A DNA stretch of 64,000 nt, from assembly GCF_006345805.1 (NCBI RefSeq), contig NC_043015.1:26784001-26848000 (forward strand), read 5' to 3'. The position numbers and the translations under genes are program-made. Origin of the DNA: Octopus sinensis (Eukaryota). The notes below the pieces were generated by a model, which was not told the origin of the DNA, did no database searches, and worked only from the letters and a program-made list of their open reading frames with translations. Within the stretch, counting starts at the first letter, position 1. The number at the start of each line of letters is the position of its first letter. Below, piece after piece: positions 18,619-25,275 of the stretch.

Positions 18619-18994
18619 TTTTTTGTTTTTTCATCTCGCCTCACACACACACATACACACACGCACACGCACACACTCACACATACACACACATCTGTTG
18701 CGTTACCAACCTTGTCTCCACTCTTTTGCCTTTAAAAACCCACTTTGCTCTGTTTTCGTAAACATCCGCCTTTCACCATGTGCAACTCGTAAACACCAGT
18801 CGTCTTTTTTCTCTTTCCCTGTTGCCCGCTCTGGGATCTTTCTTTCCTCTCTCTTCCTTCTTATGTTTCCGACGAAGAGCTCCGCTCGAAACGTCATACC
18901 TCCCTGCTTCCTTTTCCTGAGCGCCTATTAATAATAATACTGTAATTGTTCCATTGTTGTTGTTTTTTTGTTTCCCGTTTGGATTAAAATTATA
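18619..18994 (+). repeat. Upstream pseudo-LTR of the PLE
   Basis: Direct repeat of 24897-25275, differing by a few small indels; contains HHR motif. Confidence 0.9.
18865..18899 (+). ncRNA. Minimal type I hammerhead ribozyme motif (upstream pLTR)
   Basis: GTTT-CCGACGA-A-GAGC(TCC)GCTC-GAAAC-GTC-ATAC: core, stem II, GAAA, palindromic ACGT stem III, GUC cleavage triplet; stem I has one U-U mismatch. Confidence 0.65.
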
Positions 18995-19312
18995 CCACTG
19001 CGCGCCTACACGGACCCCTTGTACCTTGGATACCAACTCCCGGATTTTTTGCACCTACGGATTATTGTTACCATTCTTCCTGACCTACGGATCACCCGCA
19101 ACCTTCTTCCGGAGTACCACCATTACCGTGATTGAAAATCATTACCTAATCTGTCCGTTGACTCTCAAATCTCTTTCCTGACTTTTTTCAACTTTTTTCT
19201 ATTGTTTTCAAACCGTCTTCACCCGTTTTCTTCTTTCGTTGTTTTCCTGTTGTCTCTCCTTTTTCCTGTTTCGCCACCACCCACCTTTACCTGTTTGCCA
19301 CCACTTCTCATC

Positions 19313-22162
19313 ATGCCTGACTTGCACTCGTTCGTCCAACACCTTCAATCCCTCCTCAGCCGCTACCTCGCGTTCTTCCCCCCACAATGTTCCGCACCTG
19401 CTATAAAACTTTCCCGCTTGCTTTTTAAGAAAACCCGCCACTCGAGTCATCTTTCCTTTCTTAGCCGGTGCCTCCGCCATCATGTCACACCCCGCGGGTT
19501 CCTCTTGAAGTTCCACGCTACCCCCTATTCCTCCCCCTTCATCGAACCCACCCTCGCTCGTACCTCCCGCTCCCTCCTCCGCGCCACCATCCGCTCCACC
19601 CGCCCCCTCCTTGACTCCCTCGACCATCAACTTCCCCAGGCCTACCTCCTTCTCTCCGCCCTCTGCCCTCCACTCTTCACCCAACCTATCCTCCGCTTCA
19701 TTCTTAATCTCAACCACCAACTCTACAACCACCTCACACACACAAAAAACAAAAAACTCCACCTCCTCCTCAACCCCTCACCCCCTTCCCCATCCTCCCC
19801 CACTGTTCCCCCCCTCCTTCGCACCTACCCCACCCTTCCACGGACCCACACACCCCCCACCGTGACCTTCCTACGCCTAACCCATCTTCACCCAACCACC
19901 CCTACCCTCCCCTTCACACCCCTGCACCCCCTCCGCCTGCCCCTAGTCCTCCCACCACCCCGCTTCCTCGCGCTGTTGTCACTATACCCCCACCTCCCCC
20001 TCTCCGCCGCTGAGCGCTCCCTCCTCAGTAAGGGTCTCCGCTTCACGCCACTCACGCGCCACTGTGATGAGTTCGAGACTCGGGCGGACGTCAACCTGTT
20101 CCTGCGCCGCCTCAAACTTCGCGCATACTACCACGCGTCCCCGCAGCGTCACAACAATCAGGATTGCCTTTTGGAGCTGGGGCGTCGTCCATCCATCTGG
20201 ACGCCGCCCCCAGGCCTTTTCAGTAGCCTAGATTCGTTTGTACATGACTGCAACGCTTTGGTCCACCGTTTCAACTTTGAACCAAGACCCCGCCGAGCCA
20301 ACCTCACTCGGGCCGAATCCATTGCCCTTCGCCACCTCCGCCGTCGTGATGACATTGTCATCAAACCGGCGGACAAAGGCGGGGCAGTGGTAGTGTGGCG
20401 CGCGGACCTATACAGGGAGGAAGCGCTCAACCAGCTTCAAAATCCACTCTTCTATCGCCTCCTCCCCTCCGATCCCACCTCCTCCTACCAACAGCGAGTG
20501 TCCTCCACCATCCACGACCTCATCTCCTCCTCCGCTCTCCCCCTCACCGCCACCAACCTCATCGTCCGCACACCCCGCACCTCCACCATCTACTTCCTTC
20601 CCAAGATCCATAAACCCTCTAATCCTGGCCGTCCCATAGTCTCTGCCTGTAATTGCCCCACTGAACTCATCTCCCTATACCTCGACCGCATCCTGTCCCC
20701 CTTAGTCGCAGCCCTCCCATCCCACATACACGACACCAACCACGCCCTCCGTCTCTTCAATTCCTTTTCCTTCCCTTCCAGCCCCTCACACCTCCTCTTC
20801 ACTTTAGATGTAAAATCCCTGTACACAGTGATTCCCCACAATGACGGTCTCCTAGCCCTCCAACACTTCCTCGACCGTCGTCCCGACCCCACCCCCAGCA
20901 CCCCCACCCTTCTCCGTTTGGCTGAGCTCGTCCTCACCCTCAATTGCTTCACGTTCGCCGGGGAAACGTACCAACAGGTGTCCGGGGTCGCGATGGGAAC
21001 TAGGATGGGCCCCAATTTCGCCAATCTCTTTCTTGGCTACATTGAGGCCCAAGTGTTCTCCCAGTTCTCTGGGCCGACCCCCGAACTATACGGTCGCTAT
21101 ATCGACGACTGCGTAGGTGCCACCTCCCTTTCCCGTGAACTTCTCTGCCAATTCATCTCTTTCCTTTCCAACTTTCACCCCTCTCTTCAATTCACCTCCA
21201 CCATCTCCAACACCTCTGTCAACTTCCTTGACATCTCTCTCCGCATCGATCACCCCTCCAGCTCTCTCACCACCACCGCCTTTTTTAAACCTACGGATTC
21301 CCACCTCTATCTCAACTTCTCTTCCTCCCACCCCTTCCACACCAAACGAGCCATCCCCTACTCCCAGTTCCTCCGCCTCCGACGTTTGTGCAGCCGCGAC
21401 CAGGATTTCGAGACCCAATCTCAATACCTGGCCCGCATGTTCAGACTCCGAGGTTACCCACCCATACTCCTCTCTGATGCCCTCACCCGCGCCCGTCGCA
21501 TCGACCGCACTACCGCCCTGTCTCCTTCCCCCCGCCCACCCCCCAACCGCACCCCCTTCCCCCTCCTTTTCCACCCCTCTACCCTACCCCTTCGTCGCAA
21601 GATACTACGTGCCTTCCGTCGCCTCCAGCTTGATCCCACCACCCGCCCCATTTTCCCTAACCTACCCCTGTCCTCTTTCAAACGAGCCCGCAATCTGCGT
21701 GACCTCCTGGTCCACAGCACCCTCTCTCCTTCCCCCTCAGCCCCACACGGATCATTCCCTTGCTCTAGATCCCGTTGCAACACTTGCCCCTTCATCACCA
21801 ACACCACCGCTGTCACCGGCTCCAACCTGCACACTGTACGCATTAGGCACTCTTTTACGTGCACCTCGTCTGGCCTTATTTACTGCATTAAATGCAACCT
21901 ATGCGGGATGCTGTATGTAGGACAGACGGGACGCCGGTTGTCCGACCGTTTCACTGAACACTTGAGGGACGTTCGCCTACACTCTCTTTCTCCCGTCGCA
22001 CGCCACTTCCGCTCGGCCGGCCATTCCCTAGATGACATCTCAGTGTTTGGTCTCGCCCCCCACCATGGTCGCCCACTTTCCAGGCTCCACTTGGAGCAAC
22101 GCTACATCTTCACCCTACAAACTACCACCCCACACGGACTTAACACAGCCCCCTCCTCTTGA
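19313..22162 (+). CDS. Penelope-like element polyprotein: reverse transcriptase + Cys-rich linker + GIY-YIG endonuclease (Neptune-type)
   Basis: Open frame 19202-22162 (first ATG 19313). PLE motifs: FLSRCLRHHVTPRGF, ERSLLSKGLRF, DIVIKPADKGGAVVVW, FLPKIHK, GRPIVS, TLDVKSLYT, GVAMGTRMGP, RYIDD, FLDI, FKPTDSHLYLNFSSSHP, CSRSRCNTC..FTC linker, LIYCIKCNLCGMLYVGQTGRRLSDRFTEH, EQRYIFTLQT..PHGLN. Confidence 0.95.
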   Translation: MPDLHSFVQHLQSLLSRYLAFFPPQCSAPAIKLSRLLFKKTRHSSHLSFLSRCLRHHVTPRGFLLKFHATPYSSPFIEPTLARTSRSLLRATIRSTRPLLDSLDHQLPQAYLLLSALCPPLFTQPILRFILNLNHQLYNHLTHTKNKKLHLLLNPSPPSPSSPTVPPLLRTYPTLPRTHTPPTVTFLRLTHLHPTTPTLPFTPLHPLRLPLVLPPPRFLALLSLYPHLPLSAAERSLLSKGLRFTPLTRHCDEFETRADVNLFLRRLKLRAYYHASPQRHNNQDCLLELGRRPSIWTPPPGLFSSLDSFVHDCNALVHRFNFEPRPRRANLTRAESIALRHLRRRDDIVIKPADKGGAVVVWRADLYREEALNQLQNPLFYRLLPSDPTSSYQQRVSSTIHDLISSSALPLTATNLIVRTPRTSTIYFLPKIHKPSNPGRPIVSACNCPTELISLYLDRILSPLVAALPSHIHDTNHALRLFNSFSFPSSPSHLLFTLDVKSLYTVIPHNDGLLALQHFLDRRPDPTPSTPTLLRLAELVLTLNCFTFAGETYQQVSGVAMGTRMGPNFANLFLGYIEAQVFSQFSGPTPELYGRYIDDCVGATSLSRELLCQFISFLSNFHPSLQFTSTISNTSVNFLDISLRIDHPSSSLTTTAFFKPTDSHLYLNFSSSHPFHTKRAIPYSQFLRLRRLCSRDQDFETQSQYLARMFRLRGYPPILLSDALTRARRIDRTTALSPSPRPPPNRTPFPLLFHPSTLPLRRKILRAFRRLQLDPTTRPIFPNLPLSSFKRARNLRDLLVHSTLSPSPSAPHGSFPCSRSRCNTCPFITNTTAVTGSNLHTVRIRHSFTCTSSGLIYCIKCNLCGMLYVGQTGRRLSDRFTEHLRDVRLHSLSPVARHFRSAGHSLDDISVFGLAPHHGRPLSRLHLEQRYIFTLQTTTPHGLNTAPSS

Positions 22163-24420: not shown

Positions 24421-24896
24421 GCTCGCGCACGCACGCGCTTGCGCCGGTTCGCGTACGCATACGCTCCGCAGGCACCTCGCTCTTGGACCGACAAGACCTC
24501 CCGCCCGTTCCTGGGACCGTCGCGTGTCGTTGGGTTTTCCCACGCCCGCCTCCGCGGGACCACTCTTCCATCTTCCCCTCAGCTGGAGTCCTTTTTCCTT
24601 AACCCCCCCCTTTTTCGTTACACACACGCGCACACATATACACACATTGCTTAAATATATACATTACTCTTACACACATTCAATCTACTCGCCATTTATA
24701 CCACCACGACACTGGACACACACACACACTACTACTCAACACACGCTGGCACGCTACATACGCCCCCACCCCTTCCCCTCCCTCCCTTCCTCCTTCCTTC
24801 TTTTTCTTACTACTGACCTTTGTCTGCTAAGCTGACCACTATCTCGCCCTACCTCACACGCCTACACACAGACGCACACACTAACACACACATATA

Positions 24897-25275
24897 TTTT
24901 TTGTTTTTTCATCTCGCCTCACACACACACATACACACACGCACACGCACACACTCACACATACACACACATCTGTTGCGTTACCAACCTTGTCTCCACT
25001 CTTTTGCCTTTAAAAACCCACTTTGCTCTTTTTCGTAAACATCCGCCTTTCACCATGTGCAACTCGTAAACACCAGTCGTCTTTTTTCTCTTTCCCTGTT
25101 GCCCGCTCTGGGATCTTTCTTTCCTCTCTCTTCCTTCTTTATGTTTCCGACGAAGAGCTCCGCTCGAAACGTCATACCTCCCTGCTTCCTTTTCCTGAGC
25201 GCCTATTAATAATAATAATACTGTAATTGTTCCATTGTTGTTGTTTTTTTGTTTCCCGTTTGGATTAAAATTATA
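24897..25275 (+). repeat. Downstream pseudo-LTR of the PLE
   Basis: Direct repeat of 18619-18994. Confidence 0.9.
25143..25177 (+). ncRNA. Minimal type I hammerhead ribozyme motif (downstream pLTR)
   Basis: Identical to 18865-18899. Confidence 0.65.

What the first reader, a model, noticed from the sequence alone, without database searches (positions are those of the whole stretch)
18619..25275. Apparently intact Penelope-like retroelement bracketed by two ribozyme-bearing direct repeats
Seen: ~949-aa RT/GIY-YIG ORF, a T23 run after the stop, and ~377-bp direct repeats with identical HHR motifs. Established: PLEs have pseudo-LTRs with minimal HHRs, and Neptune-type PLEs have a Cys-rich RT-endonuclease linker. 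Inference: cleavage after C18895 and C25173 would release a 6278-nt unit-length RNA that could be retrotransposed or circularised. The pLTR contains no ORF C-terminus, and ~2.7 kb of CA-rich microsatellite sits inside the apparent 3'UTR, so the element may carry and spread microsatellite.
Basis: partly seen in the sequence, partly recalled or inferred. Interest (0 to 1): 0.85.

Follow-up and report, generated by a model that had tools for sequence, protein, structure and literature searches.

The report
Intact Penelope-like retrotransposon carrying microsatellite
This is a young, apparently complete Penelope-like retrotransposon with its usual flanking repeats and small hammerhead-type RNA motifs, unusual mainly for a one-base change in the ribozyme core and a 2.7-kb CA-rich repeat tract in its tail, so it is a good example of a known kind of mobile element and not a new kind.

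Summary
A 949-aa ORF (19313-22162) keeps every conserved RT, linker (CX4CxxC) and GIY-YIG/CCHH residue. T23 (22169-22191) follows the stop. Direct repeats 18619-18994 and 24897-25275 differ by only three indels. The "hammerhead" gets no Rfam hit because its core reads CCGACGA (C at position 4) instead of CUGANGA. [quoted passage not shown] A near-identical relative carries the canonical U4. Helices I and II covary.

The cleave-and-release inference is not supported. The insertion spans two uncleaved sites, and the element's 3' end lies 102 nt beyond the cleavage site. Published in vitro work on another PLE shows cleavage is not needed for insertion.

The CA tract is probably carried by the element. 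An older solo copy (1178-2847) has the same tract-then-HHR layout and sits between (TA)n runs. Thirteen relatives have SSR-free 98-857-nt 3'UTRs. SSR-carrying Penelope copies were already reported in penaeid shrimp (Yuan 2021).

Verdict: new member of a known kind, moderate-low interest.

The parts
18619..18994 (+). Upstream pseudo-LTR (376 nt). It is the 3' part of a 5'-truncated upstream unit, begins at T6GT6 and contains a (CA)26 run at 18642-18693.
   Evidence: identical to 24897-25275 apart from three indels.
18862..18902 (+). Minimal type-I hammerhead-like motif with a U4C core (CCGACGA-A-GAGC/UCC/GCUC-GAAA-CG-UC). The predicted cleavage site is after C18895.
   Evidence: model R1, built from relatives only, gives 30.4 bits and E 1e-6. 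Searches give the anatomy; no Rfam hit.
18995..19312 (+). 5' untranslated region of the full unit. The unit starts where the pLTR homology ends.
19313..22162 (+). Single ORF of 949 aa. It has an N-terminal conserved region, the DKGG motif (aa 354-357), the RT core (motif A D499; YIDD 596-599), a CX4CxxC linker (aa 817-825), and a GIY-YIG endonuclease with CCHH and R879, H883, E928, N944.
   Evidence: all columns invariant in 13 relatives are kept; weak RVT_1 and GIY-YIG matches; 205 PLE-type homologues, the best at 49-56% identity.
22169..22191 (+). T23 run starting 6 nt after the stop codon.
22192..24896 (+). 2.7-kb degenerate CA/TACA-type microsatellite tract inside the 3'UTR, with non-repeat islands at about 22630-22930 and 24400-24896.
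24897..25275 (+). Downstream pseudo-LTR (379 nt), the 3' end of the full unit. It ends ...GTTTGGATTAAAATTATA against TA/TG-type microsatellite.
25140..25180 (+). Second copy of the U4C minimal hammerhead-like motif. The predicted cleavage site is after C25173.
   Evidence: 30.4 bits, E 1e-6.
1178..2847 (+). Older 5'-truncated solo copy of a related subfamily. It has a CA/TACA tract of about 1.3 kb, then a pLTR-like segment with the HHR (2710-2750, GUU site), then the same terminus TTTGGATTAACTATA. It is flanked on both sides by (TA)16-17.
60110..60297 (+). Third, short 5'-truncated copy of the pLTR with its HHR at 60156-60196 (GUU site).
   Evidence: 35.3 bits, E 3e-8.

Best explanation
Window 18619-25275 is one young insertion of an autonomous, endonuclease-containing Penelope-like retrotransposon of the linker-Zn-finger (Neptune/Nematis-like) type. 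It is in the standard partial-tandem form: a 5'-truncated upstream unit (the 376-nt pLTR) followed by one full 6.28-kb unit.

The full unit is: 318-nt 5'UTR, 949-aa RT-endonuclease ORF, T23, a lineage-specific 2.7-kb CA-type tract, then a 379-nt terminal region holding a minimal dimer-type hammerhead motif whose core carries U4->C.

How it works (inferred from the anatomy and from published PLE work):
1. A more-than-unit-length RNA is made.
2. The encoded protein nicks AT-rich or (TA)n DNA.
3. Reverse transcription starts at the site that becomes the 3' end (...ATTATA, about 100 nt 3' of the hammerhead site).
4. It copies back through the hammerhead, the CA tract and the ORF, and on into the next pLTR upstream.
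5. The CA tract is therefore copied along with the element at each round.

The hammerhead motif is under selection: 31 nt are invariant between subfamilies whose flanks are about 74% identical. Its role is unresolved. The most likely roles are weak, dimer- or protein-assisted cleavage and/or recognition by the RT. It is probably not an obligatory step that releases the template.
For: Shown:
- Intact ORF with every conserved PLE residue and PLE-type homologues only.
- pLTRs identical apart from 3 indels.
- The motif is homologous to the PLE minimal hammerhead. The relatives L005 and L006 have near-identical motifs, with CCGACGA in L005 and canonical CTGACGA in L006.
- It has the hallmarks listed by Cervera & de la Pena 2014: an extra nucleotide between A9 and 10.1, G10.1-C11.1, and palindromic 15.2/16.2.
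- Covariation in 14 relatives: 90.9% of cells paired against 64.8% in shuffles, and a score of 0.741 against 0.185 in shuffles and at most 0.19 when slid. The result is the same with 28 distinct sequences including the window.
- The relatives-only model finds exactly the 4 window sites.
- The stop-to-HHR distance is 98-857 nt with 0-2% SSR in 13 relatives, against 2984 nt here. Unit lengths are 2974-3424 nt against 6278 nt.
- The only two kb-scale CA-type tracts in 64 kb both lie directly 5' of an HHR-bearing pLTR on the same strand.
- The older CA-tract-plus-pLTR block is bracketed by (TA)16-17. Only 6.4% of window positions lie within 15 nt of such a run.
- The 3' ends of the main element and the older solo copy abut TA-type repeats.

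From the literature:
- PLE architecture and (TA)n targeting linked to the linker motif (PMC8557442).
- Internal RT initiation, an AT-rich cleavage preference, and HHR cleavage dispensable in vitro (PMC11167929).
- SSRs translocating with young Penelope copies in L. vannamei (PMC7878876).
Against: - No other copy of this exact family could be found. The best protein hits are 49-58% identical, so carriage of the CA tract rests on two copies in one window.
- Sequence homology to the left of the pLTR boundary between those two copies is weak (score 51 against a shuffle maximum of 49) or absent for the non-repeat islands.
- No target-site duplication can be called.
- The left end of the upstream pLTR coincides exactly with the right end of the CA tract. 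That is unexplained. It could equally suggest a later insertion at that T-run.
- The T23 reads as an A23 tail on the minus strand.
- Pfam support for the RT and GIY-YIG domains is below the curated cut-offs.
- No solved structure matches by sequence.
- Ribozyme activity and transcription are untested.
Confidence: 0.75

Rival explanations
1. Both hammerheads cleave (after C18895 and C25173) and release a 6278-nt unit RNA. That RNA, linear or circularised, is the template for retrotransposition.
For: - The motif is a real, selected member of the PLE hammerhead family.
- The ACGU palindrome would let the two copies in one transcript pair as a dimer.
- A circle copied for more than one round would give exactly a pLTR-ORF-pLTR product, as proposed in PMC4209133.
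- A natural U4C hammerhead still supports viroid infectivity (PMC3088659).
Against: - A linear cleaved monomer cannot give this insertion. The copy contains both sites uncleaved, and its 3' end lies 102 nt beyond the cleavage site.
- U4C reduces activity in vitro.
- Helix I of the intact copy has a U.U mismatch.
- The monomer's minimum-free-energy fold is a different hairpin.
- Minimal PLE hammerheads cleave poorly in vitro.
- For PAc, catalytic mutants did not change insertion and no RNA-seq reads end at the site.
Confidence: 0.15
2. The 2.7-kb tract is not an original part of the element. It could be a later antisense insertion of a poly(A)-tailed retroposon into the T-run of the 3'UTR. On the minus strand it reads body-A23, with T6 as a possible duplicated target. 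Alternatively it could be an in-place expansion of the (CA)n seed.
For: - T23 abuts the left end of the tract and TTTTTT abuts the right end.
- Removing 22175-24896 or thereabouts would leave a stop-to-HHR distance of about 256 nt, inside the 98-857 nt range of relatives.
- The upstream pLTR starts exactly at the right edge of the tract.
- Relatives have no SSR there.
Against: - The older, diverged copy has the same CA-tract-then-pLTR order on the same strand, and the whole block sits between (TA)n runs.
- The tract is highly degenerate (about 67% matches) although the pLTRs have no substitutions. It is therefore older than this insertion.
- No coding remnant or known repeat was found in it.
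- Even if it began as an insertion in an ancestor, it would now travel with the element.
Confidence: 0.2
3. The conserved motif is a hammerhead-derived sequence that no longer cleaves. It is kept for another reason, such as being part of the RNA element the reverse transcriptase recognises near its start site.
For: - C4 is fixed in all copies of several families: 4 in the window, 2 in L001, 4 in locus L002 (the same box also appears in the overlapping loci L003 and L004 from that contig), and 2 in L005.
- 31 nt are invariant, including non-core positions.
- The motif lies about 100 nt from the element's 3' end.
- In PAc the RNA region needed for insertion lies next to the hammerhead, and cleavage needs the protein.
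Against: - Helices I and II still covary, as expected for a folded hammerhead.
- Every other catalytic position is intact.
- The cleavage triplet stays NUH (GUC or GUU).
- U4C retains some activity in a viroid.
Confidence: 0.3
4. The structure is an assembly artefact. Two separate pLTR-bearing fragments were joined through collapsed microsatellite.
For: Complex PLE insertions and SSR-rich DNA are known to cause assembly problems (PMC8557442). The join would fall in low-complexity sequence.
Against: - The two pLTRs are not byte-identical (three indels).
- The tract contains unique non-repeat islands.
- The older copy shows the same order independently.
Confidence: 0.05

Closest known systems
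Neptune/Nematis-type endonuclease-containing Penelope-like elements (Arkhipova 2006; Craig et al. 2021, PMC8557442)
   Same: [quoted passage not shown] CX2-5CxxC linker. pLTRs from partial-tandem insertion. HHR in the pLTR. Insertion into (TA)n-type repeats.
   Different: The unit is twice as long (6.28 kb against about 3-3.4 kb in relatives) because of the 3'UTR tract. There is no adjacent inverted truncated copy. The sense strand is C-rich and G-poor, and the protein has a Pro-rich insert. Clade placement by phylogeny was not done.
Recently transposed SSR-bearing Penelope copies of Litopenaeus vannamei (Yuan et al. 2021, PMC7878876); long Penelope consensi of Penaeus monodon (PMC3124438)
   Same: Young copies with complete terminal repeats and an RT gene. 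Internal SSRs move with the element. Consensus lengths of 6-7.6 kb in a very SSR-rich genome.
   Different: I could not compare sequences, and the host of the window is not established (the only named crustacean hits are Penaeus indicus, at 61-62% to a neighbouring LINE ORF). A single kb-scale CA tract and the HHR variant are not described in the passages I read.
Minimal dimer-type hammerheads of metazoan PLEs (Cervera & de la Pena 2014, PMC4209133)
   Same: Type I. Helix I of about 4 bp, helix II of 4 bp, an extra nucleotide after A9, G10.1-C11.1, no helix III loop, palindromic ACGU, and one copy per pLTR.
   Different: The core has C at position 4 (CCGACGA), which a CUGANGA descriptor or Rfam would miss. 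Helix I of the intact copy has a mismatch.
PAc (Poseidon, Anolis carolinensis) in vitro system (Frangieh et al. 2024, PMC11167929)
   Same: Gives the mechanistic frame: AT-rich nicking, internal RT initiation that defines the genomic 3' end, unprocessed multimeric RNA as the template, and a protein-assisted hammerhead.
   Different: It belongs to a different clade with no linker Zn-finger. There the HHR overlaps the ORF start. Here it lies 418 nt upstream of the ATG and about 100 nt before the unit's 3' end.
Natural U4C hammerhead variant of a viroid (cited in Perreault et al. 2011, PMC3088659)
   Same: The same core substitution, tolerated in vivo.
   Different: There it occurs in a full-size type III viroid ribozyme with tertiary contacts. 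Here it occurs in a minimal motif without them.

Membership tests
Penelope-like elements (EN+) | Reverse transcriptase with PLE-type conserved blocks, including the DKG motif and the catalytic Asp residues | tested here: met
   D354-K355-G356-G357, D499 and Y596-I-D-D599 are kept, along with all columns invariant in 13 relatives; homologues carry PF28514, RVT_1 and PF26215. Pfam RVT_1 alone is below its cut-off.
Penelope-like elements (EN+) | C-terminal GIY-YIG endonuclease with an internal CCHH and the catalytic R, H, E, N | tested here: met
   Y857, C861, Y868, G870, R879, H883, H898, H904, E928 and N944 are conserved. GIY-YIG E 0.018, below the cut-off.
Penelope-like elements (EN+) | Pseudo-LTRs formed by partial-tandem insertion | tested here: met
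   376/379-nt direct repeats. The left one ends where the full unit's 5'UTR begins.
Penelope-like elements (EN+) | Hammerhead motif in each pLTR | tested here: met
   It is met by homology and structure, with a U4C core.
Penelope-like elements (EN+) | AT-rich or microsatellite target; variable TSD; optional tail or inverted truncated copy | tested here: inconclusive
   The flanks are TA/TG-type repeats. The candidate TSD is not significant. No inverted copy was found in the window.
Neptune clade of PLEs | CX2-5CxxC Zn-finger-like linker between RT and EN | tested here: met
   C817-SRSR-C822-NT-C825, with the Cys columns invariant or nearly invariant. The motif is shared with Nematis.
Neptune clade of PLEs | RT phylogeny groups it with Neptune reference elements | not tested
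   No reference sequences were available in the tools. Named hits are unclassified proteins of shark, snails, corals and ticks.
Hammerhead ribozyme (type I, minimal PLE form) | Core boxes C3-U4-G5-A6-N7-G8-A9 and G12-A13-A14-A15.1 | tested here: not met
   Position 4 is C. The other ten core positions are met. The close relative L006 has U4.
Hammerhead ribozyme (type I, minimal PLE form) | Helix II closed by G10.1-C11.1 and supported by covariation | tested here: met
   GC in 27 of 28 sequences. The next two pairs show 10 and 16 double changes. The window reads GAGC/GCUC.
Hammerhead ribozyme (type I, minimal PLE form) | Helix I pairing across the cleavage site | tested here: inconclusive
   the older copies pair GUUU/AAAC (4 bp). 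The intact copy has a U.U mismatch (3 of 4). The family as a whole covaries.
Hammerhead ribozyme (type I, minimal PLE form) | A15.1-U16.1, a palindromic 15.2/16.2, and an NUH cleavage triplet | tested here: met
   AU in all sequences; CG, GC or AU palindromes; GUC in the intact copy and GUU in the old copies.
Hammerhead ribozyme (type I, minimal PLE form) | Match to curated Rfam hammerhead models | tested here: not met
   no hammerhead family at gathering score or at E<=10.
Hammerhead ribozyme (type I, minimal PLE form) | Site-specific self-cleavage | not testable with these tools
   This needs transcription and cleavage assays. The folding energy calculation was uninformative.
Retrozyme-like circular RNA elements | Circular RNA produced by HHR cleavage and ligation | not testable with these tools
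   No RNA data were available. The solo pLTR copies (2710-2750, 60156-60196) are single copies, not tandem arrays.

The most novel reading that the evidence does not exclude
The C4 hammerhead core is not decay. It is a lineage-stable variant kept by selection in a subclade of PLEs (the window's element plus relatives from at least three other samples). That would imply the selected function of PLE hammerheads is something other than fast self-cleavage, for example RT recognition or protein-gated cleavage. The same element would be an active vector that plants kb-scale CA tracts into (TA)n sites of an SSR-rich genome.
Probability: 0.25. Interest if true: 0.5.

Novelty: new member of a known kind. 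Interest (0 to 1): 0.3.

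Why it matters
The element is a clean, probably still competent PLE copy, and it could serve as a test object for two open questions.

- **What PLE hammerheads are for.** This is a natural U4C core that has been conserved across diverged families. It sits next to a relative with the canonical U4, so a one-base swap experiment is available.
- **How far retrotransposons drive the extreme microsatellite load of some crustacean-like genomes.** A 2.7-kb CA tract inside the transposed unit would be a direct example.

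Neither point changes the current picture. PLE architecture, pLTR hammerheads, (TA)n targeting and SSR carriage by shrimp Penelope elements are all published.

Tried and rejected
- **Rfam** on the whole window and at a permissive E-value on the pLTR found no hammerhead. The sub-threshold mir-297, mir-466 and SCARNA7 hits are CA/TG repeat artefacts.
- **Target-site duplication.** A 17-nt match (16 identical) between the flanks looked promising, but 376 of 459 TA-context control pairs score as high, so I rejected it.
- **Homology left of the pLTR boundary** between the main and older copies. It is borderline in the CA-rich part and not significant for the non-repeat islands. I therefore rely on position, not on sequence.
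- **PDB sequence search** gave no hit.
- **Thermodynamic folding** of the monomer and dimer did not recover the hammerhead fold. My attempt to score the dimer failed because that structure is pseudoknotted in dot-bracket notation. It is uninformative.
- **Third copy (60110-60297).** I considered whether it ends at an alternative upstream RT start (a missing 'tail'). I dropped this because its 3' part still aligns to the terminal block.
- **Host identification** through a neighbouring LINE ORF gave Penaeus indicus at only 61-62%, plus a 97% hit on an anonymous 2-kb contig. The host remains unproven.

Full report
**What is there**

The stretch 18619-25275 has the following parts.
- A 376-nt direct repeat at 18619-18994.
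- 318 nt of untranslated sequence.
- One long ORF from the ATG at 19313 to the TGA at 22160-22162 (949 aa, no internal stop).
- A run of 23 T at 22169-22191.
- 2.7 kb of degenerate CA/TACA-type repeat with two non-repeat islands.
- A second copy of the repeat at 24897-25275 (379 nt).

The two repeats differ by three indels (a G, a T and an AAT unit) and by no substitution.

**The protein**

Pfam gives only sub-threshold matches to RVT_1 (aa 432-606) and GIY-YIG (aa 854-887). The 5.8-billion-protein search returns 205 homologues, the best at 49-56% identity. Most of the 120 listed carry the PF28514/RVT_1/PF26215 combination, and some also carry GIY-YIG. The named hits come from a shark, marine snails, corals and ticks.

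I aligned the ORF with 13 full-length relatives. It keeps every column that is invariant among them:
- the DKGG motif (354-357);
- PKIHK;
- the motif A Asp (D499);
- YIDD (596-599);
- the linker C817-X4-C822-XX-C825;
- the GIY-YIG core with its internal Cys/His residues and R879, H883, E928, N944.

The ATG at 19313 aligns with the relatives' starts. The only oddity is a Pro-rich insert of about 45 aa (about aa 217-262).

By the criteria in Craig et al. 2021, DKG, a C-terminal EN with CCHH and a CX2-5CxxC linker make this a canonical EN+ PLE of the Neptune/Nematis type. I could not run a phylogeny against reference elements.

**The hammerhead question**

Rfam finds no hammerhead, either at gathering score or at E<=10 on the pLTR. 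The reason is visible in the sequence: C-C-G-A-C-G-A | A | GAGC-UCC-GCUC | GAAA | CG | UC^A. Position 4 is C instead of the conserved U.

Everything else matches the minimal PLE hammerhead of Cervera & de la Pena 2014:
- a short helix I;
- one unpaired nucleotide between A9 and 10.1;
- G10.1-C11.1;
- no helix III loop;
- a palindromic ACGU that can only pair between two copies.

I tested homology directly. Relatives fetched by protein (L001, L002-4, L005, L006) each carry the motif 98-329 nt after the stop codon. L005 and L006 have nearly identical motifs and flanks, yet L005 reads CCGACGA and L006 reads the canonical CTGACGA.

In 80 further metagenome loci, most PLE relatives have CUGANGA or the known U3-A8 covariant. 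C4 is confined to the window's element and its closest relatives: 9 of 28 distinct sequences.

On an alignment of 14 relatives, with the window excluded, the structure is strongly supported:
- 90.9% of cells are paired, against 64.8 +/- 2.5% in shuffles;
- the covariation score is 0.741, against 0.185 in shuffles and at most 0.19 for slid controls.

A covariance model built from those 14 sequences finds exactly four sites in the 64-kb window:
- 60156-60196 (35.3 bits, E 3e-8);
- 2710-2750 (34.5 bits);
- 18862-18902 and 25140-25180 (30.4 bits, E 1e-6).

The next best hit scores 13 bits at E 0.28. Adding the window and more loci gives the same picture.

So the motif is a genuine member of the PLE hammerhead family with a U4C core. 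It is also under selection. The four window copies belong to at least two subfamilies whose flanks average 74% column identity, yet 31 consecutive nucleotides are invariant.

U4C is a known natural variant. It lowers activity in vitro but supports viroid infectivity (Perreault et al. 2011). In the intact element helix I has a U.U mismatch and the cleavage triplet is GUC. The older copies have a clean GUUU/AAAC helix and GUU.

**Does cleavage release the transposing RNA?**

The arithmetic is right: 25173 - 18895 = 6278. The structure argues against a linear cleaved monomer as the template.
- The insertion contains both cleavage sites intact.
- Its 3' end (25275) lies 102 nt beyond the second site. 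The older solo copy ends at the equivalent point (TTTGGATTAACTATA).
- The template therefore ran through two sites uncleaved, or it was a religated circle copied for more than one round.

Published evidence points the same way.
- Minimal PLE hammerheads cleave poorly.
- In the only reconstituted PLE (PAc), reverse transcription starts internally at the site that becomes the genomic 3' end.
- In PAc, hammerhead catalytic mutants do not affect insertion, cleavage needs the protein, and no RNA-seq reads end at the site.

I therefore rate the cleave-and-release reading at about 0.15. I treat the role of the motif as unresolved between weak assisted cleavage and RNA recognition.

**The CA tract**

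In 13 relatives the stop-to-hammerhead distance is 98-857 nt with 0-2% simple repeat, and units are 2974-3424 nt. Here the distance is 2984 nt and the unit is 6278 nt. The tract is therefore specific to this lineage.

Three observations suggest it travels with the element.
- The only two kb-scale CA-type tracts in the window (1103-2426 and 22256-24466) both lie directly 5' of a hammerhead-bearing pLTR on the same strand.
- The older block 1178-2847 (tract plus pLTR) is bracketed on both sides by (TA)16-17, as expected for one insertion into a (TA)n run. Only 6.4% of window positions lie that close to such a run.
- The tract is highly degenerate although the pLTRs carry no substitution, so it predates this insertion.

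Against this:
- sequence homology between the two tracts is borderline at best;
- the upstream pLTR starts exactly at the tract's right edge;
- T23 reads as an A23 tail on the other strand, so an ancestral antisense retroposon insertion into the 3'UTR T-run is possible.

Either way the tract is now inside the transposed unit. I could not find other copies of the family, so the decisive test is open.

The idea itself is not new. Yuan et al. [quoted passage not shown] P. monodon Penelope consensi reach 6.25-7.6 kb.

**Target site**

The flanks are TA/TG-type repeats. This fits the AT-rich preference of PLE endonucleases and the (TA)n bias linked to the linker motif. A candidate duplication is not significant in this context.

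**Host**

The window is extremely rich in simple repeats. A neighbouring LINE ORF hits Penaeus indicus proteins at 61-62% and an anonymous contig at 97%. A penaeid-like crustacean is plausible but not shown.

**Verdict**

This is a well-preserved new member of a known kind of element. It has two modest points of interest: a conserved U4C hammerhead core, and a kb-scale CA tract inside the unit.

Noticed in passing
window 14957-15259 (-): Weak remnant of the linker/GIY-YIG region of another, more distant PLE (tblastn 30% identity to aa 786-887, E 7e-9).
   Followed up: no
window 4749-6002 and 7217-7933 (+); 15615-16016 (-): Fragments of non-LTR (LINE-type) ORFs with a C-terminal Cys/His knuckle. 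The best database hit is 97% identical on a 2-kb anonymous contig. Named hits are Penaeus indicus (61-62%) and Clytia. This hints at the host but does not prove it.
   Followed up: partly
window 19313-25275 (+): The whole sense strand of the element is G-poor and C-rich. The ORF is C 43.8% and G 14.6%, against C 19.8% and G 17.0% for the whole window. The protein has a Pro-rich insert of about 45 aa that is absent from 13 relatives. The cause is unknown.
   Followed up: partly
window 43950-45032: About 1.1 kb of almost pure A+T (GC about 6% in the 44001-45000 bin).
   Followed up: no
L002-L004 (ENA ERZ25070530, contig ctg127612, 29.7 kb, marked circular): A contig made of about ten head-to-tail PLE units with a period of 2974 nt, each with a C4 hammerhead. 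It is either a long genomic tandem array or an assembled multimer/circle.
   Followed up: no
window 18871-18895 and 25149-25173: The motif is nearly self-complementary (GACG-AA-GAGC-UCC-GCUC-GAAA-CGUC). The predicted lowest-energy fold is an extended hairpin that hides the cleavage site, not the hammerhead fold.
   Followed up: partly
window 37716-37748 and 39562-39594 (-): Two weak model hits with identical scores 1.85 kb apart (13 bits, E 0.28). They suggest an unrelated local duplication.
   Followed up: no
window 800-955, 17334-17439, 18068-18129, 18465-18543: Long perfect or near-perfect (GATA)n, (ATG)35, (TACA)15 and (AGAT)20 arrays next to the element. The region is exceptionally dense in simple repeats.
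   Followed up: no
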